From Octopus sinensis (Eukaryota), in the NCBI RefSeq assembly GCF_006345805.1, contig NW_021832851.1, positions 32,825 to 96,824 of the forward strand: a DNA stretch of 64,000 nt. Direction: 5' to 3'. The position numbers were made by a program, and so were the translations under genes. The notes under the pieces are model-generated. The model ran no database searches, was not told where the DNA came from, and saw nothing but the letters and a program-made list of their open reading frames with translations. Below, piece after piece: positions 1,300-56,123 of this stretch. Positions within the stretch are counted from its first letter, which is position 1. Every line of letters begins with the position of its first letter.

Positions 1300-2525
1300 C
1301 TGCCCATTCTAATTTGCAGATTTTTTAAAATTATCAAAAGATTTTCATAGATATTTTCAACAAATTTTTCAAAACTTTTTGCCGAAAATTAAAAAAAAAA
1401 TTTTCAAAACAATTTCACGAAAGTTTTCAGAGATTTTTATCGACAATTTCAAAAAAACTTTTCAGAAGATTTTCATGAAAAAATATTTCAAAAAAATTTT
1501 GACCAAAAGATTTTCACTAAGATTTTAAAATAATTTTTCAAAGATTTTTGACGAAAATTTCAAAAAACGTTTCAAAAGATTTTGACGAAAATTATGAAAT
1601 AATTTTTCAACGATTTTTAACGAAAATTTCAAAAAACGTTTCAAAAGATTTTGACGAAATTTTGAAATAATTTTTCAACGATTTTTGACGAAAATTTCAA
1701 AAAATTTTCAAAAGATTTCCATGAAAATAGTTTCAAAATTTTGAAAAAACTTTTGACGAAAATTTCAAAAATATTTTCAAAAGATTTTCACGAAAATTCT
1801 GAAAACATTTTTGAAAGACTTTTTACGAAATTTCGGAAAAATTTTTTAAAGAATTTCATGAAATTAAAAAAAAAATTTTTCGAAGATTTTTGACAAAATT
1901 ACAGAAAAACGTTTCAAAAGAATTTCACGAAATTTTTTTTTTCATTTTCAATGATTTTTGACGAAAACTTTGAAAAACTTTTCAAAAGAATTTCACGAAA
2001 TTTTTTTTTTCATTTTCAATGATTTTTGACGAAAACTTTGAAAAACTTTCCAAAAGAATTTCACGAAAATTTCCAAAAAGTTTTGAAAAGGTATTCACGA
2101 AAATTTTGAAAAAATTTTTCACAAATTTTTGACGCTAATTTTGAAAATATTTTTCATAATTTTTTTACAATAATTTTGAAAAACTTTTCAAAATATTTCC
2201 ACGAAAGTTTTGGAAAATTTCCCTAAAGATTTTCACGAAAATTTCGAAAAACTTTTCAAAATAGTTTCACGAAAATTTCGAAAAACTTTTCAAAATATTT
2301 TCACGAAAATTTCGAAAAACTTTTCAAAATAGTTTCACGAAAATTTTGAAAGAATTTTTCAGAAACTTTTGACGTAAATTATGAAATTTCACGAAAATTT
2401 TGAAAACATTTTTGACGAAATCTTTTGAAATTTTTTTCAAAATTTTCGTGAAAATCTTTTTAAAAGTTTTTTAAAATTTTCCTCAAAATATTTTGAAAAG
2501 TTTTTATTTTAATTTTTGCCAAAAG
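1300..2525. repeat. Degenerate ~35-bp A/T-tract minisatellite
   Basis: Unit such as TTCACGAAAATTTCGAAAAACTTTTCAAAATAGT, nearly perfect at 2232-2340 and diverged elsewhere. Confidence 0.85.
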
Positions 2526-3145
2526 ATTTTCTCCTAGTATAGAGCTATCTGTCTCCATTTTCAGTGTACTTTTCATTAGTCAATCCTACCTATGTTTTCC
2601 AACAACTTCTGTTGTGGTTGCATGGAATTGATCGCGTAGTCCCGTGTTGCGTAATTTTTCTTTTATAATTCTCCTTTTTTATTTCTTCCTTTGTTTTTCC
2701 TTTATTTTCTGCTTTTAATAATCCCTCGTTCCTAACTACCACTAGCAAAATTTCCTTACTTTGGCCTAGCTATCTCATTAAGCTCTTATGATCAATATGA
2801 AGGCAGTATTCCACACTTACCATTGCCCTTCCTCCATTTGCCCTCTTCATCTATAGGTGATCAGTGTCTGCAATATATGCTGGGCTCAATGCATCGTTAG
2901 AAGCTTTCTTAACTTTCGGTTCATCTCCTTCAGCTGCTTCTCTGTCCACTTCAGGATCCCAGCCCCACACCGAACTACTGCGACTGCGCGACAGTTTATT
3001 GCTGGACTTATGCTTCAGGCATTCACCTTTGAAGCCAATAATTTTCTCACTCGCCACAGGTACACTCATTTTGTCTTTTCCGTCAAGTTATGGGCTTTTA
3101 TTCCATCTGCTTCAAGTATTCCCAGGTATTTATTGCTGGATTGAG
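2525..3145 (-). pseudogene. Old R4/Dong-type LINE fragment (RT C-terminus/thumb region)
   Basis: Hand translation with stops and frameshifts: KYLGILEADGIK...RVRKLLASKVN...AVAVVRCGAGILKW...RKLRKLLTMH...ADTDHL*MKRANGGR. This is collinear with the 40547-42529 ORF. Confidence 0.75.
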
Positions 3146-3589
3146 GTTGAATTGCCTTCATATTACATTCTGAGTTCAATTTCCGCCGAGATGGACCGCG
3201 CCATTTATCCTATCGCGGTCGATAAAATATGTACCAATGGTACAATGGGATGGGGTCGATCTAATTAAATTTCCCCCTTCACCGTATTTGCTGACCTCGT
3301 TTCAAAATTTGAAAACATTATTATTGTTTTTGCTTTCCCTGTTCCTGCTGTTTTATTTGTTGTTAACCTTTTCCTCTACTTTGTTTTTAACCTGGAGCCT
3401 ATGTTAGAAATATTGGTTTCGAGCAAGGCTAAAAATATATGGGGAGATGCAGCTAAGTCAATTACATCGAACTCAAGCGGTATTCATTTTATCGACACCG
3501 AAAAGGATAAAAGAGAATATCGCCCTCGGCTCAGTTTGGATTCTGAACGTAAGGACGGACGCCCCACACTAGAATTATTAATCATTATC

Positions 3590-3667
3590 GTGATTACTAG
3601 TCGTTGCTGTTGTTGTTGTTCTTGTTGTTGCTGTTGTTGTTGTTGTTGTTCTTCTTCTTCTTCTTCC
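3590..3667. repeat. (GTT)n-(CTT)n microsatellite (3' tail of the adjacent SINE)
   Basis: Read directly from the sequence. Confidence 0.9.
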
Positions 3668-4114
3668 ACTCAGGACTCCCGCCTAGCCATAAGGAATAAT
3701 CGCTAATTCGAGCCTCCTCTAAGCTACTAAGAAAGCGTGTGGCAACTTGAAGATCCACGCATCACACGCGATAGACTGGCGGTTGTACGGGCGCGAAAAC
3801 TACTTTGTTATCCTCATTCCGTAAACGGTGGCTTTTAACGGGTGGAGAGCTGAACCATCCTGGAATAAAGAGAATTCGCAAACTAGACTCGGGTCTGAAA
3901 GTTTACCACACCATAGTGGTTTGCACCATGGTTCCTCTGCTTTGTGGCAGAAGTAGGAAGAGAGAAAATTGTGGTGAAAGAGTACACAGCGGTGTTCACT
4001 CCTCAGCGACGGAGCGTCGTGGATAAACACTCACAATGCCCGGTCAGGGAATCAAAACCGCGTTCTTACGACCGCGAGTCCACCTCCCTAACCACTGGGC
4101 CATTGCGACTCCAC
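3668..4114 (-). mobile_element. tRNA-derived SINE (type C head, distinct body)
   Basis: Minus strand starts GTGGAGTCGCAATGGCCCAGTGGTTAGGG (A box) then GGTTTTGATTCCC (B-box-like) and ends in a (GAA)n(CAA)n tail. Confidence 0.7.
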
Positions 4115-4922
4115 AGTTGCTGTTGTTGTACTTGATGATTATCACGATGTTGCAACAGTTGTTGTTCTTTTTCTTGTTGCTGTTGTTGTTGATGTTGTTG
4201 CAATATCAGCGGCAGTAACAGCAGCGGTAATCAGCGATATTCAACTTTCCCCATTTCCCTTCATTAAATGTACAATTTACTACATTTGTCATTATCCCCA
4301 TTAATTTTCATTCATTTTTTTTGTTTATTTGTTTGTTCGATTCCCCATTTATTTTTTTCTCTCTCATTTAATTATTCTCATTAATTTGTTCTACTATTTC
4401 TATTCACACCTTCATCTCATATTTGCCTCATTTGCAATTTTCGCATCAAATTTTATTCATTAACTTCTTACGTTTTGTTTAAATGTTCGTAATTTATGTG
4501 ACTGTTATATATTTTTATATATTTTATGTTTATATTTAAAGAATTAAAACATTATTATTTAGGAATGTACTTTTACATTTTAATTTCTATTTATTTTCTC
4601 AATAAAATACACTTTACTAATTTATATGCACTCTTAGTTAACACATGCTTTTCAATTGTCACCAATTTTAGTTCATCTCTTCTTTCAACATCAAAATATG
4701 GCGCCGTTACAGTTCTTTATCTCTAGCTCTAGTAACTGTTGCATTTGTTATTGTTACATTAGTTGATATTGTTTTTGTTGTTGCTTCGGCTTTTAGTATT
4801 GTAGATTTTGAAGCAATTTATTTTGTTTTATTATTGATATATACATGGTATGTGTATTTGTCCATGTGTAATTGTGTATACGCGCGTGTGTGTTTGTGTA
4901 TGCATATGTGTTTTATTGTGCG

Positions 4923-5070
4923 TGTTCTGAGTTCAAATTCAGCCGAGCTCGACTTTGCCCTTCCTCCTTTTGGATTCGATAAGATAAATATCAGTAATGC
5001 ACTTCGGTCGATGTCATCGATTAGCGCGCAACCCTAAAATCGAGGCTTTACGCTTAGAGCGGAAAAGATT
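4923..5070 (+). mobile_element. SINE family A fragment
   Basis: Contains the GTTCTGAGTTCAAATTC...CGACTTTGCC core seen in more than 15 copies in the window. Confidence 0.75.
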
Positions 5071-5089
5071 ATTATTATTATTATGGTTG

Positions 5090-5230
5090 TTATTTTTTCC
5101 TTCTTTCATCAAATTTTCTTCCGTTTCTCGCCGAGTGTTTTCCGTATACCTAGGGCAGAGAAGCTCACTGTATGCATTCCCAGATTACACACGCAAATTC
5201 ACAGGTAAATATGTATTTAAAAATTAATAA

Positions 5231-5232
<2 letters not shown>
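5090..5232 (-). mobile_element. 5'-truncated R4 copy (3' UTR only)
   Basis: Closely matches 40275-40420 (AAATTTTCTTCCGTTTCTCGCCGAGTGTTTTCCGTA...CACGCAAATTCACAG) and is flanked by (TTA)n. Confidence 0.85.
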
Positions 5233-5303
<71 letters not shown>

Positions 5304-5343
5304 TATTATTATTATTATCATTATTATCATTATTATCATTATT

Positions 5344-5635
5344 GAGTGAGAGAGCAGTGCATGCGATCAATATGACACTGGCGTAAAATATAGGAAGCCC
5401 AGTACACCCATCATGACAACCCGTCTGATAAGGGTACACTAGGCACATGCATCACAACCATATGTGCGCGACATGGTGATCTCATATCAAGATAAACAGC
5501 ACATGACCTTGCAGATGGGGCCCAGTTAGAATTTTCTTCTGGTCGAGTAGCCCTTCCGGCTCAAAAGGTCCCTGAATAAGGATTGTTTAAGGATGTTGAA
5601 CGAAACCCCCTTGAGGTGAATTATTCAAACCCAAA
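5344..5635 (-). mobile_element. Partial copy of the ~530-bp R4-tail-sharing short element
   Basis: Homologous to 39991-40222 and 45246-45771. (TAA)n tail on the minus strand; truncated at 5635. Confidence 0.85.
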
Positions 5636-5908
5636 GGGGGGGGGGGGTTACTGATGCTTTTAGCCCCAGGCGATCAACGTCACCAGAAGGACTTTAGACA
5701 CTATCTCAGTGTCCTTGTGTTACTTGCAAAGGGAGGTCATCCTCCCTCGAAGACCCGAGTACTACATACGGACTATGGTTTCAAGGTAATTGCCTCTCGT
5801 CAACGCATGGTAAGCACCGGTCTTCGATGAAGGAGTCTCCTCGCAAGTAATATATAATGCTTTTCACAGGACTCCTTTAAAAGCATCAGTAACACCCTCC
5901 CCCCCCCC
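5636..5908. mobile_element. Possible MITE with G-run terminal inverted repeats
   Basis: G12-TTACTGATGCTTTTA (5636-5662) versus TAAAAGCATCAGTAAC-ACCCT-C10 (5878-5908). No TSD found. Confidence 0.45.
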
Positions 5909-6305
5909 AGTGGCTAGCCACATTCAGATGGCTGATACCCTTTACGTTGTCGAGCGGTTACTGTTTATATCTCGTTCAGAGATTTATTATTGTTTTCAGA
6001 CAGTTTTTCTACATCAGTGACAGTGGTTACTGTGAAAAACATTATATATTACTTGCGAGGGGACACTGCATCAGTAACACCCCCCCCCAGTGGCTAGCCA
6101 CATTCAGATGGCTGATACCCCTTACGTTAAATTTATTTTGCCTTTTCTCAATCTGGCTATGTGAACACGGTAAGCTAGCAACTCCGTATTTAGCAAGTGG
6201 GGTATAAACGGGCGCCCATTGTTTTAAAACAAAGCAGAAAATGGTCATGAGATAATTCGCGGACATCCAAATAGAGACAGGATCTTACAAGGAGCGAAAT
6301 TTTCG

Positions 6306-6706
6306 TGCGTAAGAGTGGCTCTGTTGTAAGTAGCTTGCTTACCAACCACATGGTTCCGGGTTTAGTCCCACTGCGTGGCACCTTGGGCCGACCATAGCCT
6401 TGTGAGTGGATTTGGTAGACAGAAAGTGAAAGAAGCCTATCGTATATATGTATATATGTATAATTATATATATATATATATGTGTGTGTGTGTGGTGTGT
6501 GTGTGTGTGACTGTGTGTCTGTGTTTGTTCCCCCAACATCGCTTGACAACCGATGGTGTTGTGTTTACGTCCCCGTAACTTAGCGGTTCGGCAAAAGACC
6601 CCGATAGAGTAAGTACTAGGCTTCCAAAGAATAAGTCCTGGGGTCGATTTGCTTCAGCATGCCCACAGTCAAATGACTGAAACAAGTAAAAGAGTAAAAG
6701 AGTAAA
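6306..6706 (+). mobile_element. tRNA-derived SINE family B (internal microsatellite)
   Basis: Head GGTTCCGGGTTTAGTCCCACTGCGTGGCACCTTGGGC, internal (TA)/(TG)n, tail CAGTCAAATGACTGAAACAAGTAAAAGAG. Confidence 0.85.
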
Positions 6707-8034
6707 CCATCATGAGAAGTACAAAGTTAAAAGCCACCGTGGCAAGATTATTTGAATGTCAGAATTTGAGATATAAAAGCTTTAAACGTTTGAGCATCGA
6801 GTTGATGTATAAACAGCTAGGCTAGACAAATGGATATATCGTTACAAATTAGTGGTGAGTGAAAATATATTCATTGATTGGTGCTCGAGAGAATAGGGAT
6901 TAAATTCAAGTGTCATGTATTGCCTAGTGTTTTATCATTCATTTCCGCTAAAATACGCGTAAAGATGGACGAAATGCCGCTAAGCTCTTTCCTCGCGTGC
7001 TAACGACTGCCAGGATACCATTTTCCCGTAGCCTCATATCGACTTTAGATTTTGTGTTAGGTATCGCATATATAGGTACGCGTAGAGTGAAGAATTGTGT
7101 TGAACACTCTGTATCTGTATTTCGGAAACACAGCATTGTCACCGACATTTCGAATCTACCAGAAGGCTACATTAAAATCATATATGTGGGTGTGTGGTAA
7201 TTCCCAGACAATTACATGTTACCACATTGAGTATGTAGTTCAGCTGATCGGATAACCGAAGTGCTCATTATAGGAAAACGACCGAATTTCCATTTACTTT
7301 AGCCATTAAAATATTTTCGCAAATAGTTCAGAAATATACACTATTCAACACTTTGATGTCTGATAAAAGGTAGATATTATCTACAGTGCAGTTCCTCTCT
7401 TAAAATATGCAAACGTCGTATTCGTGAGCCATCAACATCGCCATCGTTTACAATCATTATAGCATACATCTGATGTCTGATAATATATGGCGTCTCTGCT
7501 ATTTGTGAGGCAACGTTATTATTTTGTTGATTTTTTAATATTTTTTTTTCTTCTTGTTGTTTTACATAAAACGTTCGTTGCTGTAAGCTATTAATTGCTA
7601 AACTTTTTTGCAGCTTCAATTTTATATTCTGCTGAGATCTTTAAACCAATCATTTGAATAAAAACTAGTTAGCCGAGAATGTCTAGTGAATTTCAATCCA
7701 AAGTAGACAAAGGTACTGCATAAAAACCTTCAGGAATACGCTTTGTTCCCCATGCGTCAACCATTTTCAATTCATGATGCTTACATGTTTTAGTGTCATT
7801 TCAAGACTTTCCGAGCTATACCAATTCTAACACATCCTACAAGTATGAGTATAATACAAATGCAATTATTCATACATAGGTATACAATCACACACACTCA
7901 CAGACATCTAGTCAGCTACTGTCACCAATACAAAAATGTTTATGCACACAGGAATGCGTATTTGTATATATATCTACATGTATATATATATACATGTATA
8001 TATATAGGTATGTATATATATATATATATATAGG

Positions 8035-8078
<44 letters not shown>

Positions 8079-8685
8079 TATATAGGGTTATATAGGGAGT
8101 AGATAGATAGATGGAGTGATATATTTATGGATTTAGATATATACAAACATAAACAGACGTACATATATACGTACATCTTTTAATATATATCTATATATGC
8201 ATAGATGTGTTCTTGTTTAGATATATATATATATACATACATATATACACACACGTATATATATTAATATATATGTAAATATACTTATCTATATACATTT
8301 ATATTCGATCTTCTGCGTATACTTGTCAATAATTTTTATGAGTATTTTCTTAAGTTTCCCCTGTAAAATCTGTGTTGCATATCGTATAGTTAATTGGAAA
8401 TATTTTTCCACCACTACATCTGAAGTCAAAGTAAAATAATGTAACACGTAACTGAGAGTATAGTGAGATTTAAATACGAATTTCCTGTTGAAACGCGGCT
8501 ATTTGTAATTAAAAGGAAATATTCGATTTTGTTGCAGCAAGGAACAACTTTGCTGGGAATTTTCATAGAATTCATTTCATTAGCATTTAAAAATCTATAT
8601 GGAATCTTTTGGTATGAGGAGGAATTCAATCAACCGCTTTAAATTGATCATTACATATATGTGAGTGTGTATATGAATATATGCA

Positions 8686-16523: not shown

Positions 16524-17173
<650 letters not shown>

Positions 17174-17384
17174 AAAGTAAGAGAGAAAGAGAGAGAGAGA
17201 TGTAACTTCTTTAAGTGTTTGCATTACAAGTTAGCCTGACTCCTTAAGACAGCAACATTTTGATGCATGTTCAGATATTTCTTTTGGGTTCCCTTGTCTC
17301 CCCAGTCCCATATTCCTGAACAAGAATTTTTCTCTAAATGGAAGAATCATACAGAGATTATAATATGTATTGTATATATATTCT

Positions 17385-40275: not shown

Positions 40276-43200
40276 GTTTTTTCCTTCTTTCTTCAAATTT
40301 TCTTCCGTTTCTCGCCGAGTGTTTTCCGTACACCTAGAGTAGAGAAGCTCATATATGCATTCTCAGTTGACACACGCAAATTCACAGATAAAATATGTAT
40401 TTAAAAATTAATAAATAAATAAATTCATGGATGGATGTTGTTTTCACAGCGATAGTGCTCTTCTTAGTACATGAGCCGTTCCAGTTAATACGATTTTTTG
40501 CACTTCCTGTAGGGATGTTAGGCCTGGAATCATTTTCAAATAGGTTTCAGTACCTTTTTTTTATCATTCCTAGAGATCCTACAATCACTGGCAGGTCTTT
40601 ATATTCACTAATCTTGTCAAATTCTTTCGCCGCTATATTGTGATCGCAAGGGATACTCATGTCAATTAATAAACACTTCTTTTTTGTCTGATCTTTTATA
40701 ATAATATCCAGTTTATTAGCTTTTATAGTTTTGTCGGTCTGTATGGGGACGTCCCATAGAATCGACACATTTTCTCCCTCAGTCACGGCTTCAGGATGGT
40801 GTTTATACCATTTGTCAGCGGTTTTGATTTTATAATACCGACATATTGTCCAATGTAAATATTGGCCGACTCTGTCATGTCTTGCTCTATATTCTGCAGG
40901 TGCTAAGACACTACACCCTGAGATTAGGTGGTCTATTGTTTCAATCTCATCGTTACAGAATCGGCATTTTGGGTCAGCTCCATTTTTTATCACATTGGCT
41001 TGGTAGTTCCGGGTTAATAAGCTTTGGTCTTGAGCAGCTAATATGAAACCTTCACTCTCTGCTTTTAGCCCTGAGCTTCGTAACCATTGGTGCGTGTGTT
41101 TCTGGTTGACATCTGCTTGTTTGCTACGGGCCACATACTTGCCATGGAGAGGTTTCTGTTCCCATCTGCTAGCTAAATTTTCATGTGCTTTTGTTTTTGC
41201 AATAAATCTTATTTTCTTTGCAGCTGCAGTTGGCGCATTTCCTTCAGCCTGCTCAATCTGATGGGTATCTAAGAGATCAGCAGCGAATGTTTTGCTCTCT
41301 TTGAGAATAGAGTGAAGTTTTTTCGGTCTTTCATGTTTTTCAACAAGTTTTATCATCCAATCATTGGTTGCTTCAAGGTATTTGGCCAGTCCGATTGTGG
41401 TGGTTTTGCATGTAAGTTCAAGCTGGATCAAACCTCGACCTCCTTGAGCTCTGGGAAGGTAAAGGCGATCCGCGTCTGCCTTCGGATGGTGCATCTTATT
41501 ACATGTCAGTAGCTTGCGGAATTTTCTGTCAATTTTCATTATTTCACTGGTATTCCAGTTAAGCACATTGAAGCTATAAAGAACAACTGGTACTGCTAAG
41601 GAATTTATGGCTAACACCTTATTATATGCATTCAGCTCAGACTTCAGGACTGCTCGAACTCTTCTATAACATTCTTTCCTAACCTTCTCTTTCATGCTTG
41701 CATGCTGGATACCCGAGCCTTCATTTATTCCTAGGTATTTATAGGTTTGTTCCTGCTCAAGTTCCTTTATTACTGTTTCGACATCTAATTCGATTGAACT
41801 AGACTTTACCAATTTCCCTTTCTTAAAAGTGGCTTTGGTACACTTTTCAAGGGAAAACCTCATCCCGATATCATCACTGAATCCTTTCACGGTATTTAAT
41901 AATCCTTCAAGCTCTTCATCAATTTTGCCATATAGCTTTAAATCATCCATATAAAATAGATGGCTTATTTTCTTGTTGTCAATTTTGTAGCCATATCCTG
42001 TTCTATTCAGTTCACTTGAGAGTGGTATTAGTGCTATGCAGAAAATTAGTGGTGAAAGTGAGTCACCTTGGAAAATTCCACAGTTTATGCTAATGTTGTT
42101 TGAGTGCAATACTCCATTAGAATGATATAATTGGAGCTTCGTGTTCCATAGTGACATATTATGCATTAAAAAATCTGAAATCACAGGAGAAATTTTGAAA
42201 ATATCCAGCGATTTGAGAATCCACGAATGCGGTATGCTGTCAAAGGCTTTTTTGTAATCAATCCATAAAGAGCTGAGATTTCTGCGCTTTTTATTGCAGT
42301 TCTCAAGGATCATGCGATTAATTAGGAGCTGATCTTTGCATCCGTATGAGCCTCGTCTGCATCCTTTTTGTTCAGTGGGAAAGAGGTTATTCTCTTCCAT
42401 AAACTTATATGTTTTCTCTACTAGAATAGATGTCAAAATCTTATAGGTGGTAGATAAACATGTAATAGGCCGGTAGTTTTTTTGGTTCTTTCGTTTTGTT
42501 ATTTGTAGGGAGGAGGTAAGCAATACCATTTGCCATCCAATGGGTTGGGGTTTTTTTTCGGGTCTTTCATAATACTTTTAAATAGTATTACTAACATTTT
42601 GTGTGCGGACGAGTGATGAGAGCCAGAAATTTGGTACTCTATCAATACCAGGGGATTTCCACTTATGAGCCTTCGTTAGTGCCCTCCTTAGGTTGGCGAT
42701 TGAGATGTCTTCCCATACCTGTTCTTGTAGATTTTTGTAATCATCTTGGGTGCGTTTGATCCACTCTGCATTTTCATTGTATGGTTTCTCATCACTCCAG
42801 ATACCCTTCCAAAAGATTTCAACTTCTTCCATTAGGGGTGGATTTTCAATGGTTATTTTTTCTTTCCCTATTTCCCTGTAAAATGATTTGGCATTGGATT
42901 TGAACATCTTATTTTGTTTGTAGAATTTGATTCTTTTCTCAAATCTGCGTATTCTCTGAGCTTTTGCTTGAACTTTTTGTTTAAGTGTTTCTTTCGCTGA
43001 CATTAGTTCTTCTCTTGTTGAATGTCCATATTTTCTCACAATCTTCCTGCCTTTTCTTGGTCTTACATCATTTCCAGAGATTAGCTCGGTTAATATTGAT
43101 ATCTCTCTTCGCAATGATTCAATTTCAGCTTCAATTCTACTCTTCCAGTTTGATTTGTTTTCGAATTTGGTACTGTTGGCTTTTTGGGTGTTAAACAGCG

Positions 43201-43925
43201 TCTTTCGATTACCTTAGCGACAGAATAAATAATTTCATTTAATTTATTAAGATCGGGTTTTAGTTGGTGTATGATTTCTTGTGTCACGCAGTTGCCAATT
43301 TTTATTTGTGTTTTATGTTGGTGTGCATTTGAGAGTTTATGGAGTGGTTCCATAGTTGTATGGCCTACAACTGCAAGCTCATTCAGAACTTCTTGCTTTA
43401 TTTCAATGATAGATTTTCTGCGTTGTTCAACAAACATGTGGTCTTCAAATTCTGTTTCGACATCATTTTCCGGGATGTTTTTTCTAGGGTCATTATATAT
43501 TCCTTTTTCTTCAGGATCTTGAGTTGTTTCGGCAGATGCTCGCCTTTCAGTCAACGCTTGTGGTCCAACATTCCTCCACTCAGCTTCGTTATTTCTTTCC
43601 TGGCTGATCTGTTTTCATCCAGGTTTGGTCTGCTAGCATATATTACTACTTTATATTCTTCCCAGTTCCATTTAGTTCTTGTACTTTTTTGATTTTTTGG
43701 TCGTTGTGGTGGTGAACTTTGGGGGCTTAATTTGGGACAAATCCCGTTTAAGTGACCTTCCAGGTTTGTATTCAGGGAAGATATTCTGCCATTTGAAAAT
43801 GTTTCGCCATCAGGCTGGCAGCCTCCTGACAGGCGCGCTTCCTGTATAACTATTGGACAAGCGATTCGGTGTACTGTTAGAAATGTTCTTTTCAAGTAAA
43901 GTTAAATTATTAAGTTTTCATTTAA
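40275..43925 (-). mobile_element. Apparently full-length R4/Dong-clade non-LTR retrotransposon (RLE type)
   Basis: ORF pieces from RTKWNWEEYKVVI through RT to the RLE domain, a 3' UTR and a (TAA)n tail. The 5' boundary is approximate. Confidence 0.9.
40547..42529 (-). CDS. Reverse transcriptase plus CCHC/restriction-like endonuclease (largest open piece of the R4 ORF)
   Basis: NYRPITCL, GIFQGDSLSPL, HLFYMDDLKLY, KYLG, CRFC...H...C, RARHD. A +1 frameshift in an A run hides the true end GTETYLKMIPG...VLRRALSL* at 40444. Confidence 0.92.
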   Translation of the reverse strand: MVLLTSSLQITKRKNQKNYRPITCLSTTYKILTSILVEKTYKFMEENNLFPTEQKGCRRGSYGCKDQLLINRMILENCNKKRRNLSSLWIDYKKAFDSIPHSWILKSLDIFKISPVISDFLMHNMSLWNTKLQLYHSNGVLHSNNISINCGIFQGDSLSPLIFCIALIPLSSELNRTGYGYKIDNKKISHLFYMDDLKLYGKIDEELEGLLNTVKGFSDDIGMRFSLEKCTKATFKKGKLVKSSSIELDVETVIKELEQEQTYKYLGINEGSGIQHASMKEKVRKECYRRVRAVLKSELNAYNKVLAINSLAVPVVLYSFNVLNWNTSEIMKIDRKFRKLLTCNKMHHPKADADRLYLPRAQGGRGLIQLELTCKTTTIGLAKYLEATNDWMIKLVEKHERPKKLHSILKESKTFAADLLDTHQIEQAEGNAPTAAAKKIRFIAKTKAHENLASRWEQKPLHGKYVARSKQADVNQKHTHQWLRSSGLKAESEGFILAAQDQSLLTRNYQANVIKNGADPKCRFCNDEIETIDHLISGCSVLAPAEYRARHDRVGQYLHWTICRYYKIKTADKWYKHHPEAVTEGENVSILWDVPIQTDKTIKANKLDIIIKDQTKKKCLLIDMSIPCDHNIAAKEFDKISEYKDLPVIVGSLGMIKKRY

Positions 43926-45904: not shown

Positions 45905-46795
45905 TTAATAATAATGATAATAATAATAATAATTGATATTATATGATATAAACAGTTTAATAACAATTCCTATGCGATGTTTTCAGTTACGTTGCTTGAA
46001 TTTCGTATTAATGATATTTTGTATAAGAAGATTATTCGTGAATGCTCAAGTTGTCTATATCACATACACTTCAAATACATAATGGATATATAACTATATA
46101 AATATCTTTATGTTATGTATTTTTAATACACATATACAGAGATTTTAAATTCACATCATAACAAACATAAAAGGAGAAAGTATACAGGAAGTACAGAAAA
46201 AAAAATTGTAATTCAATCATTCTGCTAAATTGCTTTCAGGGTTCAAGGATGTCAAAGTAATCAAACGGTAAATTCATATTATTCACTACAAGGAAGACGT
46301 AATTATAATATCGCGTGATATGAGATGGAAAGGCATATAGGTTATTTCAAAGATATTTGTACCAAGATATATTTACACGATTAATATTCTTCTGGGTGAT
46401 TCTTATATATGTTTACCTGAAATAACGAACGCAGGAAAACAGACAAATTAAACCATATAGCATACACACACACACACGCGCGCACACACACACACATATA
46501 TATATATATATGTATATGAATGTATATGTATATATGTATGTATATGTATATATATATATATATGTATGTATTTATATATACATACATACATATATATATA
46601 TATATAAACAGGCATATCTAGATACGGTATATGCATACATATATAAAGACATATATATGCTTGTGTATATAGTATAATTATATATATTGCATATTCATAT
46701 AACGGTACATAAATGTGGACATATGTATATGTACATATATAAAAGTATATGAGTGTGTATAAATATAAATATGTATATATACATATATATATGTG

Positions 46796-46842
<47 letters not shown>

Positions 46843-47153
46843 ATGTATATATATATATGTATATGTATGTATATATACATGTATGTATATATATAAATGT
46901 ATGTATACATAAATATATATATCGTATCAACAAAGGGAGGGATGTCTTTGTGCGGGTATATTTCAAGTATACTATATATATACACACCAAAACACATGGT
47001 AAATATTTGATTGATTTTAAATCAAAATGCAACAGTCCTTTATGCAGATCCCTCCAAACGACATATATCAGCTTAGACATGTGTGAGAGTATCTGAATGT
47101 CTGTGTCTTTATATGGACACGCATATATATATATGTATGTATATATGTATATA

Positions 47154-47205
<52 letters not shown>

Positions 47206-47441
47206 ATATACATATGTGTAATAAAATATATTATATATATATACATATATGTGTATATGTTTATATATAAAATATAAAATGGGACAAGAACGGAAAACTG
47301 CCGGACAGCTAGTAATGCAAAATGGGACAACAACACATCCATATAGACGATACAAAGGAAACAAGGACAGGTCATTCGAAGCCCTCTATCCTAAGTCAAG
47401 AACCAGATTATCCTCGCAATGTCGATATATATATGTATATA

Positions 47442-48828: not shown

Positions 48829-50702
48829 CAATATATGAATTAACATTGAGTATTAACTTCATGAAATTAGCGATTTGATGAAACCAAAACATATAAAGTG
48901 GCATCAGCTCTGATTATTATAATTCGAATATAGTTTTGCGTGAAGTATAACGGCGATCACATAATCACTTTCTTTTAGGCCTTTTAACATTTATATATTC
49001 ATATATCTTCTTCGTGTATCCTCGTAGAAATGATGAAATGACATAGATGTTAGAAGAATGAAAAATGTGTAGATAAATGTAAGCGATTTATAATTAGTAA
49101 GTAATGCAAGCAAATCATACATGAATATATGTCTGTGTATGTGTATGTGTATATATATGCGTATAATGTTTTTGCGCGTCTCGATGTATGTATAAAAGTT
49201 TCCATATGACAGTTCATACCGTCATAAAAGTGTAAACGTCGAACAATATGTTAGAAATAGTGATGAAATCTCTCTCAAATTACACCTAGCCTGATGTAAA
49301 CATTAACATCAACAACGAAAACACAACGAAAACACAAACAGGAATTTAACAAATTACCATCTGTTTACCGAGCAAACACATTGCTATTTGCTGCAACACT
49401 GATATTTTATGCCTTGCTTCCACCACATCCCTATAAGAATATTAATGTTTATTTGTCCATACTAAATATTCGCTATCACTGCGTTCAAATTAATTTCCCT
49501 AGAAATCTGAACCGGTTTTTGATCATTCTGCCATTAATAATTCCAAGCGTTAGAATATATGTATACACTCAGAAATAGCATCTTTATGAATTTTTTTTAA
49601 TCACTCATTTGGGGTTGAAATATAACCTCGTACTTGTTTATTAAACAGTGTTTTGCTGCCTATGTTAATGTTCTTTGGAGGTGTTTTAACATTTTGTTAG
49701 TGCTTTTTTGCTTTTGATTTTTTTGATGTAGAACTCAATACATGATGAAACATGCTGTCACCAGCGAAGAAAATAAATATCCAAAATATCATCATTTGAC
49801 TCAGTAAAGTATAGACAAGGCAAAAATGTTTTATAAATCAATTATGAGATAATGCATGTATGAAGTTTTATTAAAATCCCACTAAGTGACGTATTTATTC
49901 GGCTATTTTTTACGCACAAGTATCGCAGAAATTAAAGCTAAATTTTCACTTGCTTTACAGCAGGCCTAAGTTGTATCATCGAAATTAACTTAAAATATTG
50001 TTATGCATTGCAGAAGAACCATATTTGCTGTCGACATTGTTTATGACCTTACATATTTTATACCTTTTTCTTTTAATCGGAGAGGAATGCATTGCGTATA
50101 AACCATTACGGCGACTCTTATATTTGTAGAAAGCAGGGGGGAGTCTGTTAGTTTGACCCTCACCCCATCCCTTAGTTTATCCTCTGATTCGTCATTACCT
50201 GTTATGGATTTTCCATCTGTGAAAGCACACTTCAGCTCATATGGACTAGTAAAATCGCTTACAATCGTAATTTCGTTTCGTACACTAAATGGCTTGCTGT
50301 TAAACAAGTTTGATTCTAATTGCTTCATCAAAATCAAAATAGGCCATGATTAAACTAACAAAAATGTAGCCGAGATTTCAAAACTTTAACCATTTTTCTC
50401 TGATAATAAATGTTTTGGATGTTAAAAATATAATAACCAGATTAATAAGTAAATACGATTCATATATAAACACTTTATAGTTTGTATTTTAATAAAACAT
50501 AACTCATTATGTTTTCCTCTATTAATTTCTCATTTATACTCTATGTACAATATGTGAATAAGCAGAGTACTATATTGCTTAGGATGGTATTTAACAGACA
50601 TTGAATGATTAAATATTAAACATATTTAAATGTTAATCGTTGATCAAGTAGTCATTACTCTTTCTAGAACTGTACATACATATATACGTGTATATATGTA
50701 TG

Positions 50703-50811
<109 letters not shown>

Positions 50812-51245
50812 TATATATAAGGGTAGCAAAAAAGTCTAGAAAAATTCTCCGCTACCAGCGGTCCAGCGAGAGAGAAAAGATAGTCAAAGACTATATAATA
50901 TACATTTAAAAATATAAGGAATGGCCATAATAGGACATTCGACTCACTAGAAAGAGCAGCCAAACTCAAACCGCTAATAGTTGTAATTCTGAAATTGAAA
51001 GAGAAATAAAAACGTTTACCCCTTTCATCTCTGGACTATGCATAGTAGCGGAGAATTTTTTCTAGAATTTTTTGCCACCCTTATATTTATTAATTAATGA
51101 TTTTTTGGCTAATTTTGAAATTAAATCAGCAGTTTATATTTGCTGCTGAGAAAACCGCGCGATTGCGGTAGATTTTGAAAATTTATAGCATATAGACTGG
51201 AGGCTTCCCTACCATCGCCTCGTGGATATATACTCGTCCTTGGCT

Positions 51246-51340
51246 TCTCTGCTGACGAGGCACGCCAGCTGTAAATAAATTTAATTTAACTTAATTAATT
51301 TGTTTACCAAATTTTGCCGAAACTCTACATAGTCCAGAGA
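51246..51340 (+). ncRNA. Complete type I hammerhead ribozyme (GUC site after 51334)
   Basis: Stem I TCTCTG/CAGAGA; core CTGACGA (51252-51258); stem II GGCA/TGCC with inner GTAAATAAATT/AATTTGTTTAC; GAAA (51319-51322); helix III ACT/AGT. Confidence 0.82.
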
Positions 51341-51945
51341 TTAATTAAGTTAAATTAAATTTATTTACAGCTGGCGTGCCTCGTCAGCAGAGAAGCCAAG
51401 GACGAGTATATATCCACGAGGCGATGGTAGGGAAGCCTCCAGTCTATATGCTATAAATTTTCAAAATCTACCGCAATCGCGCGGTTTTCTCAGCAGCAAA
51501 TATAAACTGCTGATTTAATTTCAAAATTAGCCAAAAAATCATTAATTAATAAATATAAGGGTGGCAAAAAATTCTCCGCTACCATGCATAGTCCAGAGAT
51601 GAAAGGGGTAAACGTTTTTATTTCTCTTTCAATTTCAGAATTACAACTATTAGCGGTTTGAGTTTGGCTGCTCTTTCTAGTGAGTCGAATGTCCTATTAT
51701 GGCCATTCCTTATATTTTTGAATGTATATTATATAGTCTTTGACTATCTTTTCTTTCTCGTTGGAACGCTGGTAGCGGAGAATTTTTTCTAGAATTTTTT
51801 GCTACCCTTATATTTATTAATTAATGATTTTTTGACTAATTTTGAAATTAAATCAGCAGCTTTTGCGGTAGATTTTGAAAATTTATAGCATATAGACTGG
51901 AGGCTTCCCTACTATCGCCTCGTGGATATATACTCGTCCTTGGCT

Positions 51946-52040
51946 TCTCTGCTGACGAGGCACGCCAGCTGTAAATAAATTTAATTTAATTTAATTAATT
52001 TGTTTACCAAATATTGCCGCTACTATGCATAGTCCAGAGA
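51946..52040 (+). ncRNA. Second HHR copy with GAAAC changed to GCTAC (probably inactive)
   Basis: Exactly 700 nt from the first copy. Helix III is the perfect palindrome ACTATGCATAGT. Confidence 0.7.
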
Positions 52041-52952
52041 TGAAAGGGGTAAACGTTTTTTTATTTCTCATTCAATTTCAGAATTACAACTATTAGCGGT
52101 TTGAGTTTGGCTGCTCTTTCTAGTGAGTCGAATGTCCTATTATGGCCATTCCTTGTATTTTTGAATATATATATATATATACATATTCAATTATACATAG
52201 ATATATCAGTGCAATAGACAAACATTTTGAGACACAACAGATTAATATAAATATTTATGTATATATATATATATGGAGAGAGAGATCGCAATAGAGAGAA
52301 AGAGAGAGATAGATAGAGAGATCGGGAGAGAGTGTGAGAGAGAAACATACATATATGTATGTGTGTGTGAGTGCGTGGGTGTCTGTGTGCATTTGTGTGT
52401 ATATGTCTATTTGTGTTTTTCGTGGGTATGTGCATGTATGTCCTGAACTCGGTGCTCACGTATGGAATATTCCTAGCAAAGACACAGGTAATTCTTCAAT
52501 TCAAATTAAAAGCGTAATAGAAAGAGGAACAACTGTTTCTAATGACAATTAAGTATCAGCAGTACAAATGAAAGAATGCGATGCAAATTCATTGAACGTT
52601 AGATGTGGATATAGAGTGGGCATTGACTCTGATGTTTGGTAAGCACAATAAACAACTCCAAACATGTTTCTGTCTTTCTAAACCTCTTCATTTAAGTTAT
52701 GATCTAGAAAAAACACTTCACTGGTTGAGAAAATTAGAATAATTAAATAGACGAACTTCCCAAACATGACTGTGGTGTCGGAAACATACAGACAGATATG
52801 GAGAAATATACAGGATTGATGGAAACTAACTAGGCATTAGAAATTGCTTATAGAATTTTTTATATCACAGAAGTTATGACGAAAACATTTTTTAAAAAGA
52901 AAACACGAAAGGAGATTGTTTATCTCCTCATTCTCTTATTTCTTATTTTCCA

Positions 52953-55361: not shown

Positions 55362-55403
55362 CATTTGTGCATATATATATATTATACATTTATACATTTG
55401 TGC

Positions 55404-55448
<45 letters not shown>

Positions 55449-55466
55449 GTAGCGAGAGAAGTGGAG

Positions 55467-55638
<172 letters not shown>

Positions 55639-56123
55639 GCGTACATACATACTTACATGCATCCATAGCCAAATGCATACATAAATACATACATGCATAC
55701 ATACATATAGGTAAGTTTAATATGCATGTGTGTGCATTTGTTTGTTTGCTTGTGTGTATATGCACAAATTTGCTCTCCTTCGACCGAATGTCACTTTTCC
55801 TCTCTCTCATTCTCTCTAAGAAATTATTTGATTGTATTTGTTTGAAAATGCAACTCAACCAAAATTTCCTTATATAGAATGGGAATAAGGATAACTCCGC
55901 CCTTAGTTTCTGTAAGGCTTCACTCATGTTCTTGAAACAAAGAAAAGACGAAATAAATCAACTTCGGGATTCGCCTGAAAGATATTGTCAGATAGAAACA
56001 TCACTGCAATGCCTCCGAAAATAGACCCCAGCCAAGTTACTATGGACCATACACACACACTTATATACATTCAAACACTCATACACAGACACTCACACAA
56101 ACACACACATATATATATGTATA

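What the first reader, a model, noticed from the sequence alone, without database searches (positions are those of the whole stretch)
51246..51340. Structurally complete hammerhead ribozyme at the apex of a 1-kb palindrome
Seen: all canonical HHR parts are present in order. Stem I is 6 bp (TCTCTG/CAGAGA), the core is CUGACGA, stem II GGCA/UGCC carries an 11-bp AU-rich inner hairpin, then GAAA, a 3-bp helix III and GUC at 51332-51334. The fold-back junction begins 6 nt after the predicted cut. A second copy 700 nt downstream has the complementary defect: GAAAC changed to GCTAC but a perfect palindromic helix III. The consensus of the two is an ideal HHR. Established: type I HHRs with palindromic helix III occur in Penelope-like elements and metazoan retrozymes. 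Inference: this is a young, possibly active ribozyme of an unannotated element family.
Basis: partly seen in the sequence, partly recalled or inferred. Interest (0 to 1): 0.9.

Follow-up and report, generated by a model that had tools for sequence, protein, structure and literature searches.

The report
Hammerhead ribozyme in a retrozyme-like repeat
The 95-base stretch is a real hammerhead ribozyme sequence, but it is one slightly damaged copy of a short, non-coding, Penelope-style retroelement present in hundreds of copies in this 2.7-Gb animal genome, a kind of element already known from many invertebrates.

Summary
Window 51246-51340 (+) has every part of a type I hammerhead ribozyme (HHR) in the right order. 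It is the only such hit in the window, and 0 of 200 shuffles give one.

It belongs to a repeat family of about 468 nt with no ORF and 34% GC. The genome holds 99 exact copies of the 3' half and at least 755 first-look candidates.

Family insertions have fixed TA-rich 3' ends and variable 5' truncations. Many are partial tandems longer than one unit. About a third carry an inverted 5'-truncated copy, and 40 of 47 abut (TA)n. This is the Penelope-like element (PLE) insertion signature, so I read the family as a non-autonomous, PLE-mobilised "non-LTR retrozyme".

Rfam misses even ideal copies, probably because of the 52-nt helix II insert and the weak helix III.

The apex copy keeps the core, but two private substitutions destroy the palindromic helix III. 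It also sits inside a perfect 236-bp hairpin. The second copy has a dead core. Neither is likely to be an efficient ribozyme.

The inner perfect palindrome is atypical for the family and could be a later duplication or an assembly artefact.

Verdict: a new member of a known kind, of modest interest.

The parts
50700..50825 (.). (TA)n microsatellite, left flank and target of the insertion
   Evidence: In the family, 40 of 47 insertions abut TA-rich flanks, against a 2.9% background.
50826..51044 (-). Inverted copy of the post-cleavage part of the unit ('X'). Its canonical TA-rich 3' end faces outward onto (TA)n. It includes the reverse complement of the cleavage site and helix III at about 51030-51051.
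   Evidence: (I2, I6), alignment, and the 3'-end positions.
51045..51245 (+). Pre-ribozyme part of the unit ('Y'), forming the left inner palindrome arm
   Evidence: (D4, I1).
51246..51340 (+). Apex hammerhead copy. The core is intact. Helix III is degraded by A80C and G82A relative to the family consensus. The predicted cut is after C51334.
   Evidence: 110.8 bits with the family model; variant unique in the genome.
51300..51339 (+). 40-nt unpaired spacer of the palindrome. It covers the 3' third of the ribozyme: the helix II 3' strand, GAAA, helix III, GUC and CAGAG.
   Evidence: I1.
51340..51575 (-). Right inner palindrome arm, a 100% reverse complement of 51064-51299. It starts in the 10-nt palindrome ATTAATTAAT at the helix II hairpin apex.
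51576..51945 (+). Direct unit: X from 51576 to 51771, then Y from 51772 to 51945. It carries a 27-nt deletion at 51862/51863 relative to 51136-51162.
   Evidence: (D3-D5).
51946..52040 (+). Second hammerhead copy. The core is dead (GCUAC: A13C, A14U). Helix III is the perfect 12-nt palindrome ACTATGCATAGT.
   Evidence: 114.4 bits; CCGCTAC variant found only in this locus.
52041..52172 (+). Terminal partial X, ending at the family's other canonical TA-rich 3' end and abutting (TA)n
   Evidence: many copies end at query position 160.

Best explanation
Window 51246-51340 is one decayed copy of the hammerhead ribozyme (HHR) carried by a short retroelement family. The unit is about 468 nt (441 nt here because of a 27-nt deletion), AT-rich and non-coding.

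Shown:
- The family consensus has a 6-bp helix I, CUGACGA, and a 4-bp helix II (G10.1-C11.1) extended by an internal loop and an 11-15-bp AU hairpin. It then has GAAA, a 12-nt palindromic helix III (ACUAUGCAUAGU) and GUC followed by the cut.
- Copies have fixed TA-rich 3' ends and variable 5' truncations. Many are partial tandems longer than one unit.
- About one third have an inverted 5'-truncated copy, with both 3' ends facing outward.
- They sit in (TA)n microsatellites.

Inferred:
- The element is non-autonomous and is copied by the reverse transcriptase/GIY-YIG endonuclease of the Penelope-like elements (PLEs) that abound in this genome. That makes it a 'non-LTR retrozyme'.
- The ribozyme, probably acting as a double hammerhead through the palindromic helix III, cuts multimeric or read-through transcripts into unit-length RNAs. 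These carry 5'-OH and 2',3'-cyclic phosphate ends that a tRNA ligase (RtcB type) can circularise.
- Reverse transcription is primed from (TA)n nicks on UA-rich sites of that RNA. This would give the more-than-unit-length and inverted insertions.

The locus in the window is one such complex insertion in a (TA)n tract, with an extra inner perfect palindrome. Both of its ribozyme copies are crippled, one in helix III and one in the core.
For: Motif:
- All parts are read.
- It is the only descriptor hit in the window, and 0 of 200 shuffles give a hit.

Family:
- At least 755 first-look candidates, with 40 scored at 92-100% identity.
- 99 exact copies of GCCGAAACTATGCATAGTCCAGAGA against 0 for the control.
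- 144 matches to the upstream 30-mer.
- The consensus is an ideal HHR.
- 42 of 52 copies have an intact core.
- Divergence from consensus is 2.1% in the core, 1.4% in helix I and 2.3% in helix III, against 5.6% in the flanks.
- One compensatory G-C to A-U change in helix II occurs in 4 copies; 3 of 500 shuffles reach this.

Retroelement anatomy:
- Variable 5' ends, and two fixed 3' ends at query positions about 160 and about 248.
- Direct dimers at about 449-495 nt spacing.
- 17 of 47 insertions contain inverted segments, always in (-)(+) order.
- 40 of 47 have TA-rich flanks, against a 2.9% background.
- Worked example: L068 8116-8770.
- The longest open frame in a unit dimer is 66 aa, and GC is 33.8%.
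- There are no tRNA, 5S or 7SL matches.

PLEs are abundant: at least 4846 GIY-YIG candidates, 147 of 150 scored as hits, with frames up to 883 aa. A 4635-nt partial-tandem PLE ends in the same (TA)n tract.

Published descriptions match:
- PLE insertion anatomy and (TA)n bias (PMC8557442).
- Canonical metazoan type I HHRs with a 6-bp helix I, a 4-bp helix II and a short palindromic helix III that act as dimers, and paired motifs on opposite strands 100-700 bp apart (PMC4209133).
- Non-LTR retrozymes of 150-450 bp and low GC, expressed as circular RNAs (PMC7229834).
- Retrozymes as PLE derivatives (bioRxiv 10.64898/2026.07.22.740005).
Against: - No Rfam hammerhead model matches the window or ideal family copies, even at E<=10. 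I attribute this to the 52-nt helix II insert and the weak helix III, but I did not test that explanation directly.
- Covariation is almost absent, because the family is young.
- No autonomous PLE sharing sequence with the element was found. The one PLE adjacent to a copy shows no blastn similarity. None of 30 GIY-YIG loci carries this HHR within 1.5 kb.
- Only monomers and dimers were seen, not long arrays.
- There are no expression or cleavage data.
- The loop 1/loop 2 tertiary contacts expected of efficient type I HHRs cannot be identified here.
Confidence: 0.8

Rival explanations
1. The ribozyme-bearing repeat is not an independent non-autonomous element. It is the pseudo-LTR or solo fragment of an autonomous Penelope-like element whose coding part is simply truncated away in most copies.
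For: PLE HHRs lie in pLTRs, and most genomic motifs are solitary remnants of truncated PLEs (PMC4209133). PLEs are very abundant here. Copies at C18 lie about 1 kb downstream of a PLE ORF on the same strand.
Against: In 47 insertions the homology never exceeds about 900 nt and never runs into an ORF. Copies longer than one unit re-enter the same 468-nt unit. The C18 juxtaposition is two separate insertions split by (TA)n, with no shared sequence, and it is repeated only through a segmental duplication.
Confidence: 0.1
2. The inner perfect palindrome (51064-51575), and so the 'ribozyme at the apex' geometry, is a post-insertion inverted duplication or a long-read assembly artefact. It would not be a product of the element's own transposition and would have no link to ribozyme cleavage.
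For: - The inner arms are 100% identical over 236 nt, while other copies within the locus differ by 2-3%.
- Every other inverted pair listed for the family is (-)(+). Only this locus has a convergent (+)(-) pair.
- The junction uses the 10-nt palindrome ATTAATTAAT and an AT microhomology. It lies 5-7 nt from the cleavage site, not at it.
- The window lies on a high-numbered contig (C9322 of 13516). I take that to mean an unplaced scaffold, which was not verified.
Against: The left arm ends at a canonical family 3' end on (TA)n, and the outer arms carry several differences. This argues that at least the outer inverted structure is a genuine old insertion feature.
Confidence: 0.45
3. The motif is a chance resemblance, or the locus is a hairpin-RNA (miRNA- or siRNA-type) gene rather than a ribozyme-bearing element.
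For: Rfam finds no hammerhead. It gives sub-threshold matches of plant and animal miRNA hairpin models across the palindrome, for example MIR841 at 111.6 bits against a gathering score of 200.
Against: - 0 of 200 shuffles give an HHR.
- The ideal motif is present in 99 exact copies.
- All miRNA matches are well below gathering score, fit both strands equally, and are what any long perfect hairpin gives.
- A long hairpin transcript could still feed small-RNA pathways, but that would be a by-product.
Confidence: 0.03
4. The family is a MITE-like DNA transposon that targets TA, and the ribozyme is a passenger.
For: It is short, AT-rich and non-coding, lies next to TA-rich sequence, and has internal inverted repeats.
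Against: One end is fixed while the other is truncated at many different positions. Copies exceed unit length as partial tandems. Inverted copies have both 3' ends facing outward. These are marks of target-primed reverse transcription, not of cut-and-paste transposition with fixed terminal inverted repeats.
Confidence: 0.03

Closest known systems
Metazoan non-LTR retrozymes (Cervera & de la Pena 2020, PMC7229834; Li et al. 2026 preprint 10.64898/2026.07.22.740005)
   Same: A type I HHR in a short (150-450 bp class), low-GC, non-coding repeat. Direct tandem dimers are present. Copies are dispersed through the genome. PLE-like origin or mobilisation is inferred.
   Different: Here mostly monomers and dimers were seen, rather than long arrays. 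The unit (about 468 nt) is at the top of the size range. Loop 2 is replaced by a 52-nt internal loop plus hairpin. Circular RNA expression is untested.
HHRs of Penelope-like elements (Cervera & de la Pena 2014, PMC4209133; Craig et al. 2021, PMC8557442)
   Same: Palindromic helix III suggesting dimeric action. Motifs occur as singles or as pairs on opposite strands a few hundred bp apart. The insertion anatomy matches: 5' truncation, partial tandems, an inverted 5'-truncated copy and a (TA)n bias.
   Different: There is no RT/EN ORF. The HHR has the canonical 6-bp helix I and 4-bp helix II without the extra unpaired base between positions 9 and 10.1 that typifies PLE min-HHRs. Helix III is 12 nt rather than absent or 1-2 bp.
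Schistosoma Sm-alpha and amphibian satellite 2 hammerheads (from my own knowledge, and as cited in PMC4209133 and PMC7229834)
   Same: Type I HHRs in abundant short repeats. A weak helix III with a palindromic loop works best as a double hammerhead in tandem transcripts.
   Different: Different sequence and host lineage, and a much longer helix II here.
Compact type I HHR family in the same genome (L031-L037)
   Same: Same genome, type I topology, palindromic helix III (ACAUGU), and a tandem pair 431 nt apart.
   Different: About 45 nt with a short loop 2. It passes the Rfam RF00163 threshold (34-48 bits), whereas the family studied here is invisible to Rfam.

Membership tests
Hammerhead ribozyme, type I | Conserved core: C3 U4 G5 A6 N7 G8 A9, G12 A13 A14, A15.1-U16.1, and H17 not G | tested here: met
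   The apex copy has CUGACGA, GAAA and GUC. The family consensus is the same. The second window copy fails at A13C and A14U.
Hammerhead ribozyme, type I | Three helices around the core with helix I open (order I-5', core, II, GAAA, III, H, I-3'), and a G10.1-C11.1 pair | tested here: met
   Helix I is 6 bp, helix II is 4 bp starting G-C, and helix III is 3 bp in the apex copy against a 12-nt palindrome in the consensus. In the family, 95.2% of cells are paired, against 26-44% when partners are slid.
Hammerhead ribozyme, type I | Covariation that supports the helices | tested here: inconclusive
   There is one compensatory G-C to A-U pair in helix II, in 4 sequences. Otherwise the young family shows too little variation.
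Hammerhead ribozyme, type I | Match to the curated Rfam hammerhead models | tested here: not met
   No hammerhead hit in the window at gathering score or at E<=10, nor in five ideal family copies. RF00163 has 45 positions and does detect other compact HHRs in this genome. The 52-nt helix II insert is the likely reason for the miss.
Hammerhead ribozyme, type I | Site-specific self-cleavage in Mg2+ | not testable with these tools
   Needs in vitro transcription.
Non-LTR retrozyme (metazoan) | Short non-coding repeat (about 150-450 bp), low GC, no LTR/PBS/PPT, each unit carrying a type I HHR | tested here: met
   The unit is 441 nt here and about 468 nt in direct dimers elsewhere. GC is 33.8% and the longest frame is 66 aa. 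PBS and PPT were not specifically searched for.
Non-LTR retrozyme (metazoan) | Tandem arrangement (dimers to multimers), so that two ribozymes flank a unit | tested here: inconclusive
   Direct dimers occur in at least 9 loci, but most copies are single and no arrays of 3 or more were seen.
Non-LTR retrozyme (metazoan) | Expression as unit-length linear and circular RNA | not testable with these tools
   No transcriptome access.
PLE-type (Penelope-like) insertion | 5' truncation, partial tandems (pseudo-LTR), an adjacent inverted 5'-truncated copy, and microsatellite (TA)n target bias | tested here: met
   compared with PMC8557442.
PLE-type (Penelope-like) insertion | RT plus GIY-YIG ORF within the element, or sequence shared with an autonomous PLE | tested here: not met
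   The unit has no ORF. There is no similarity to the adjacent PLE in L068. This HHR is absent from 30 GIY-YIG loci within 1.5 kb on either side. I therefore do not file it as a PLE proper, only as a putative PLE-dependent element.

The most novel reading that the evidence does not exclude
The long AU-rich helix II hairpin, with its palindromic ATTAATTAAT apex, may not be a neutral insert. It may be a second functional module that acts during reverse transcription as a pause, fold-back or template-switch site. That would make the ribozyme's own structure the seed of the inverted-repeat insertions typical of Penelope-type elements.

Three independent insertions start their direct copy at the same base at the foot of this hairpin (L005, L008, L104). 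The window's perfect fold-back is anchored in its apex.

A related possibility concerns the two complementary-defect copies in the window. They could rebuild one intact active site as a double hammerhead, using the apex core with the second copy's cleavage site. The hybrid helix III is predicted at -5.3 kcal/mol.
Probability: 0.1. Interest if true: 0.55.

Novelty: new member of a known kind. Interest (0 to 1): 0.3.

Why it matters
The finding adds a family of several hundred copies of ribozyme-bearing, probably PLE-dependent retroelements in a large invertebrate genome. From memory only, the assembly size and scaffold statistics fit the Octopus sinensis assembly. No tool result confirms that identification.

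The finding also shows a blind spot. A textbook-quality hammerhead with a long helix II insert is invisible to all Rfam hammerhead models, so surveys that rely on those models undercount such elements.

The family offers clean material for studying how Penelope-type reverse transcription makes tandem and inverted insertions at (TA)n. It has fixed TA-rich 3' ends, outward-facing 3' ends in inverted pairs, and recurrent 5' ends at the ribozyme hairpin. It does not change what is known about hammerheads or retrozymes.

Tried and rejected
- **Rfam searches.** Gathering and permissive searches of the window, and of five ideal family copies, gave no hammerhead hit. The negative is uninformative for this architecture. 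The sub-threshold miRNA hits are generic long-hairpin matches.
- **Autonomous partner.** I searched with GIY-YIG, fetched two loci where a PLE ORF lies about 1 kb upstream of a family copy, and compared them. The two elements are separate insertions in one (TA)n tract, they share no sequence, and the two loci are segmental duplicates. A relaxed HHR descriptor over 30 GIY-YIG loci found only one unrelated motif (L041) on the opposite strand. A manual look at the PLE 3' region gave no convincing HHR.
- **Organism.** The LINE RT in the window has a best homologue at only 66% identity, and the few named hits come from scattered invertebrates and a fish, so none points to the source organism. A literature look-up of the assembly statistics found nothing decisive.
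- **Covariation.** The test works formally but has little power in a family of about 95% identity.
- **Cleavage-site hypothesis.** I considered that inversion junctions mark RNA 5' ends made by ribozyme cleavage. I rejected it, because the junctions in 17 inverted insertions are scattered along the unit. The window's X copies also run 9-10 nt upstream of the cleavage site.
- **Upstream CTCGTC.** I considered that the upstream CTCGTC, which pairs with the core GACGAG in the MFE fold, is a conserved regulatory alternative helix. I did not pursue it, because subfamily variants (CTCATC, GTTCGTC, GTTAGTC) are not compensated.

Full report
**1. The observation**

- Helix I: TCTCTG (51246-51251) pairs with CAGAGA (51335-51340).
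- Core: CTGACGA (51252-51258).
- Helix II: GGCA (51259-51262) pairs with TGCC (51315-51318). It encloses an internal loop and an 11-bp AU-rich hairpin (51271-51281 with 51297-51307).
- GAAA (51319-51322).
- Helix III: a 3-bp ACT/AGT stem with a 6-nt loop.
- GTC (51332-51334).

I wrote a simple HHR descriptor: helix I at least 5 bp, CUGANGA, helix II at least 4 bp, GAAA, helix III at least 3 bp closed by A-U, and H not G. It finds exactly this one site on both strands of the 64-kb window and nothing in 200 dinucleotide shuffles. RNAfold recovers helix I and helix II with the inner hairpin.

The palindrome is also as described. The inner arms 51064-51299 and 51340-51575 are 100% complementary with a 40-nt spacer, and the outer arms are 98% complementary. 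The full alignment runs from about 50836 to 51810.

The second copy at 51946-52040, 700 nt downstream, has GCUAC in place of GAAAC and the perfect palindrome ACTATGCATAGT.

**2. It is a member of a large repeat family whose consensus is an ideal hammerhead**

The window is part of a 2.72-Gb, 13,516-contig eukaryotic assembly. A 161-nt query around the second copy gave at least 755 first-look candidates. The 40 that were scored are 92-100% identical.

The 25-mer GCCGAAACTATGCATAGTCCAGAGA covers the helix II 3' strand, GAAA, the palindromic helix III, GUC and the helix I 3' strand. It occurs 99 times exactly, against 0 for the reversed control. A 30-mer just upstream of the ribozyme occurs 144 times with up to 3 mismatches.

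Alignments of 49-52 distinct copies give this consensus:

TCTCTG CTGACGA GGCA ... TGCC GAAA CTATGCATAGTC CAGAGA

In the sample, 42 of 52 copies have an intact core.

Divergence from consensus is 2.1% in the core, 1.4% in helix I and 2.3% in helix III. It is 5.6% in the flanks and 6.2% in the helix II insert. This fits source copies that kept a working ribozyme while subfamilies diverged elsewhere.

Covariation is nearly absent, as expected at about 95% identity. One helix II pair changes G-C to A-U in four copies, 95.2% of cells are paired, and slid controls give 26-44%. A covariance model built from the family scores the two window copies at 110.8 and 114.4 bits.

Both window variants are private to this locus. 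GAAACTCTACATAG occurs once in the genome, and CCGCTACYATGCATAG occurs three times, all here.

**3. Why Rfam is silent**

No hammerhead model matches the window at gathering score or at E<=10. None matches five family copies with the ideal motif either.

The type I model RF00163 has only 45 positions. In this same genome it does find compact type I hammerheads of another family, at 34-48 bits. The likely cause of the miss is the 52-nt insert in helix II plus the thermodynamically negligible monomeric helix III. The Rfam negative therefore does not count against the motif.

The sub-threshold "miRNA" matches fit both strands equally. They are what any long perfect hairpin produces.

**4. What kind of element it is**

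The unit is 441 nt in the window (51576-52016). Elsewhere it is about 468 nt, judged from direct dimers spaced 449-495 nt apart, most of them 465-472. The difference is a 27-nt deletion at 51862/51863.

The unit has 33.8% GC and no open frame longer than 66 aa. It has no tRNA, 5S or 7SL similarity.

Mapping the unit onto 47 distinct insertions shows four things:
- Two fixed 3' ends, both at TA-rich sites of the unit (query positions about 160 and about 248).
- 5' ends at many different positions, with total lengths often exceeding one unit, so that copies are partial tandems.
- In 17 of 47 insertions, an inverted 5'-truncated copy on the 5' side. It is always in (-)(+) order, so both 3' ends face outward.
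- (TA)n-rich sequence on at least one flank in 40 of 47 insertions and on both flanks in 12. Only 2.9% of 30-nt windows in the 64-kb window are this TA-rich.

A clean example is L068 8116-8770. It reads (TA)n, inverted fragment, direct copy with the ribozyme, (TA)n.

This is the insertion signature described for Penelope-like elements: 5' truncation, pseudo-LTRs from partial tandems, an adjacent inverted 5'-truncated copy, and (TA)n bias (PMC8557442).

The ribozyme's build is that of canonical metazoan type I hammerheads, which work as dimers: a 6-bp helix I, a 4-bp helix II with G10.1-C11.1, and a palindromic helix III (PMC4209133). That paper also reports pairs of motifs on opposite strands 100-700 bp apart.

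PLEs are abundant in this genome. There are at least 4846 GIY-YIG candidates, 147 of 150 scored as hits, with frames up to 883 aa. One is a 4635-nt partial tandem at C18.

I therefore read the family as a non-autonomous, PLE-dependent element. That is the class called non-LTR retrozymes (PMC7229834), recently argued to derive from PLE pseudo-LTRs (bioRxiv 10.64898/2026.07.22.740005).

The dependence on a PLE is an inference. I found no coding PLE that shares sequence with the element.

**5. How it most likely works**

The sequence features and insertion anatomy are shown. The following steps are inferred from the named literature.
- Transcripts spanning two ribozymes (dimer loci, or read-through) are cut after GUC. 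Cutting is probably by a double hammerhead, in which the 12-nt palindromes of two copies form one long helix III. The predicted self-duplex is -15.9 kcal/mol, whereas the monomeric hairpin has no predicted stability.
- The unit-length RNA carries 5'-OH and 2',3'-cyclic phosphate ends and can be circularised by an RtcB-type ligase (PMC7229834).
- A PLE RT/EN nicks (TA)n. The TA-rich DNA end primes on one of the unit's UA-rich sites, which would explain the two alternative fixed 3' ends.
- Copying a circular or multimeric template gives more-than-unit-length insertions. Priming from both target strands, or template switching, gives the inverted 5'-truncated partner.

**6. The locus in the window**

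Reading left to right:
- (TA)n.
- An inverted X segment whose canonical 3' end abuts (TA)n (50826-51044).
- Y(+) with the apex ribozyme (51045-51340).
- Y(-) (51340-51575).
- X(+) Y(+) with the second ribozyme, then a partial X ending at the other canonical 3' end (51576-52172).
- (TA)n.

The outer inverted structure, with 3' ends facing outward, is typical of the family.

The inner convergent (+)(-) perfect palindrome is not typical. Every other inverted pair I could list is (-)(+). Its arms are 100% identical over 236 nt, while the remaining copies in the locus differ by 2-3%. The junction sits in the 10-nt palindrome ATTAATTAAT at the helix II hairpin apex, with an AT microhomology to CAGAG|AT. 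It lies 5-7 nt from the cleavage site, not at it.

I regard a later fold-back duplication, arm-to-arm gene conversion, or an assembly artefact as about as likely as an origin during insertion. The window lies on a high-numbered contig (C9322), which I take to be an unplaced scaffold, though I did not verify this. Only raw reads can decide.

**7. Are the two copies active?**

Relative to the consensus, the apex copy has five substitutions. Two of them, A80C and G82A, break the helix III palindrome. The self-duplex drops from -15.9 to -1.8 kcal/mol, leaving a 3-bp stem.

In a transcript that runs on into the right arm, the perfect hairpin (-193.9 kcal/mol) excludes the ribozyme fold (-18.0 kcal/mol). 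Only a brief co-transcriptional window would remain.

The second copy has A13C and A14U, changes at core positions that are conserved in hammerheads. Neither copy is therefore a good candidate for an efficient ribozyme.

One speculative exception is a heterodimeric double hammerhead. It would use the apex core and the second copy's cleavage site, with a hybrid helix III predicted at -5.3 kcal/mol.

**8. Comparison, novelty and verdict**

The closest known systems are metazoan non-LTR retrozymes and PLE hammerheads. The differences are:
- a long helix II extension,
- a unit at the top of the usual size range,
- a predominance of monomers and dimers,
- no identified autonomous partner.

In the paper library, the only work that mentions octopus together with hammerhead ribozymes and Penelope is the PLE survey PMC8557442. 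The organism itself is not established by any tool result. The match of the assembly statistics to the Octopus sinensis assembly rests on my memory.

This is a new member of a known kind. The specific copy is a decayed one, and the surprise value is modest.

Noticed in passing
window 40547-43614 (-): Long open frames of a non-LTR (LINE-type) retrotransposon. A 676-aa frame has RVT_1 (E 1.3e-31) and a weak zf-RVT match (22.7 bits, below Pfam's 27.5-bit cut-off). Two further upstream frames follow. The best database homologue is only 66% identical.
   Followed up: partly
L031-L037, e.g. G000:C16:25146363-25146408 and 25146794-25146839: A second, compact (about 45 nt) type I hammerhead family in the same genome. 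It has a palindromic helix III (GAAACATGTGTC) and passes the Rfam RF00163 threshold. One pair is a 431-nt tandem.
   Followed up: partly
L068 (G000:C18:5341000-5350900) 1861-8121: A Penelope-like element as a 4635-nt partial tandem, with 99.7% identical repeats. It has RT/GIY-YIG frames of 470, 487 and 315 aa and ends in the same (TA)n tract that holds a copy of the ribozyme element. L069 is a segmental duplicate of the region. Its 3' region carries three TTGGTCA..TTGATGACGT repeats, and no clear hammerhead was found there.
   Followed up: partly
L005 about 1100, L008 about 1097, L104 about 284: Three independent inverted insertions start their direct copy within about 3 nt of one another, at (C)GCCAGTTGTA, the foot of the helix II inner hairpin. 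This suggests a recurrent stop or switch point of reverse transcription at the folded ribozyme.
   Followed up: partly
window 51233-51259: [quoted passage not shown] Subfamily variants of the upstream hexamer are not compensated, so it is probably not a conserved switch.
   Followed up: partly
window 51058-51069 and 51136-51162: Two indels within the locus. A 12-nt AGAATTTTTTCT repeat unit is present in the left arm and absent from the right arm. A 27-nt segment is present in the apex copy's Y part and deleted from the downstream unit at 51862/51863.
   Followed up: yes
window 16719-17210, 46448-47230, 52260-52440, 55382-55957: Long microsatellite and simple-repeat tracts, visible as repetitive SIYL/YIYI frames (consistent with TCTA-type and TA/CA-type repeats) and as (GA)n and (GT)n runs. 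They produce spurious long open frames.
   Followed up: no
L041 2614-2685 (+) (G000:C4, near 70189546): A hammerhead-like motif with a long helix II and a palindromic helix III (GAAACTCGAGTT). It lies about 850 nt from a GIY-YIG domain but on the opposite strand. Its status is unclear.
   Followed up: no
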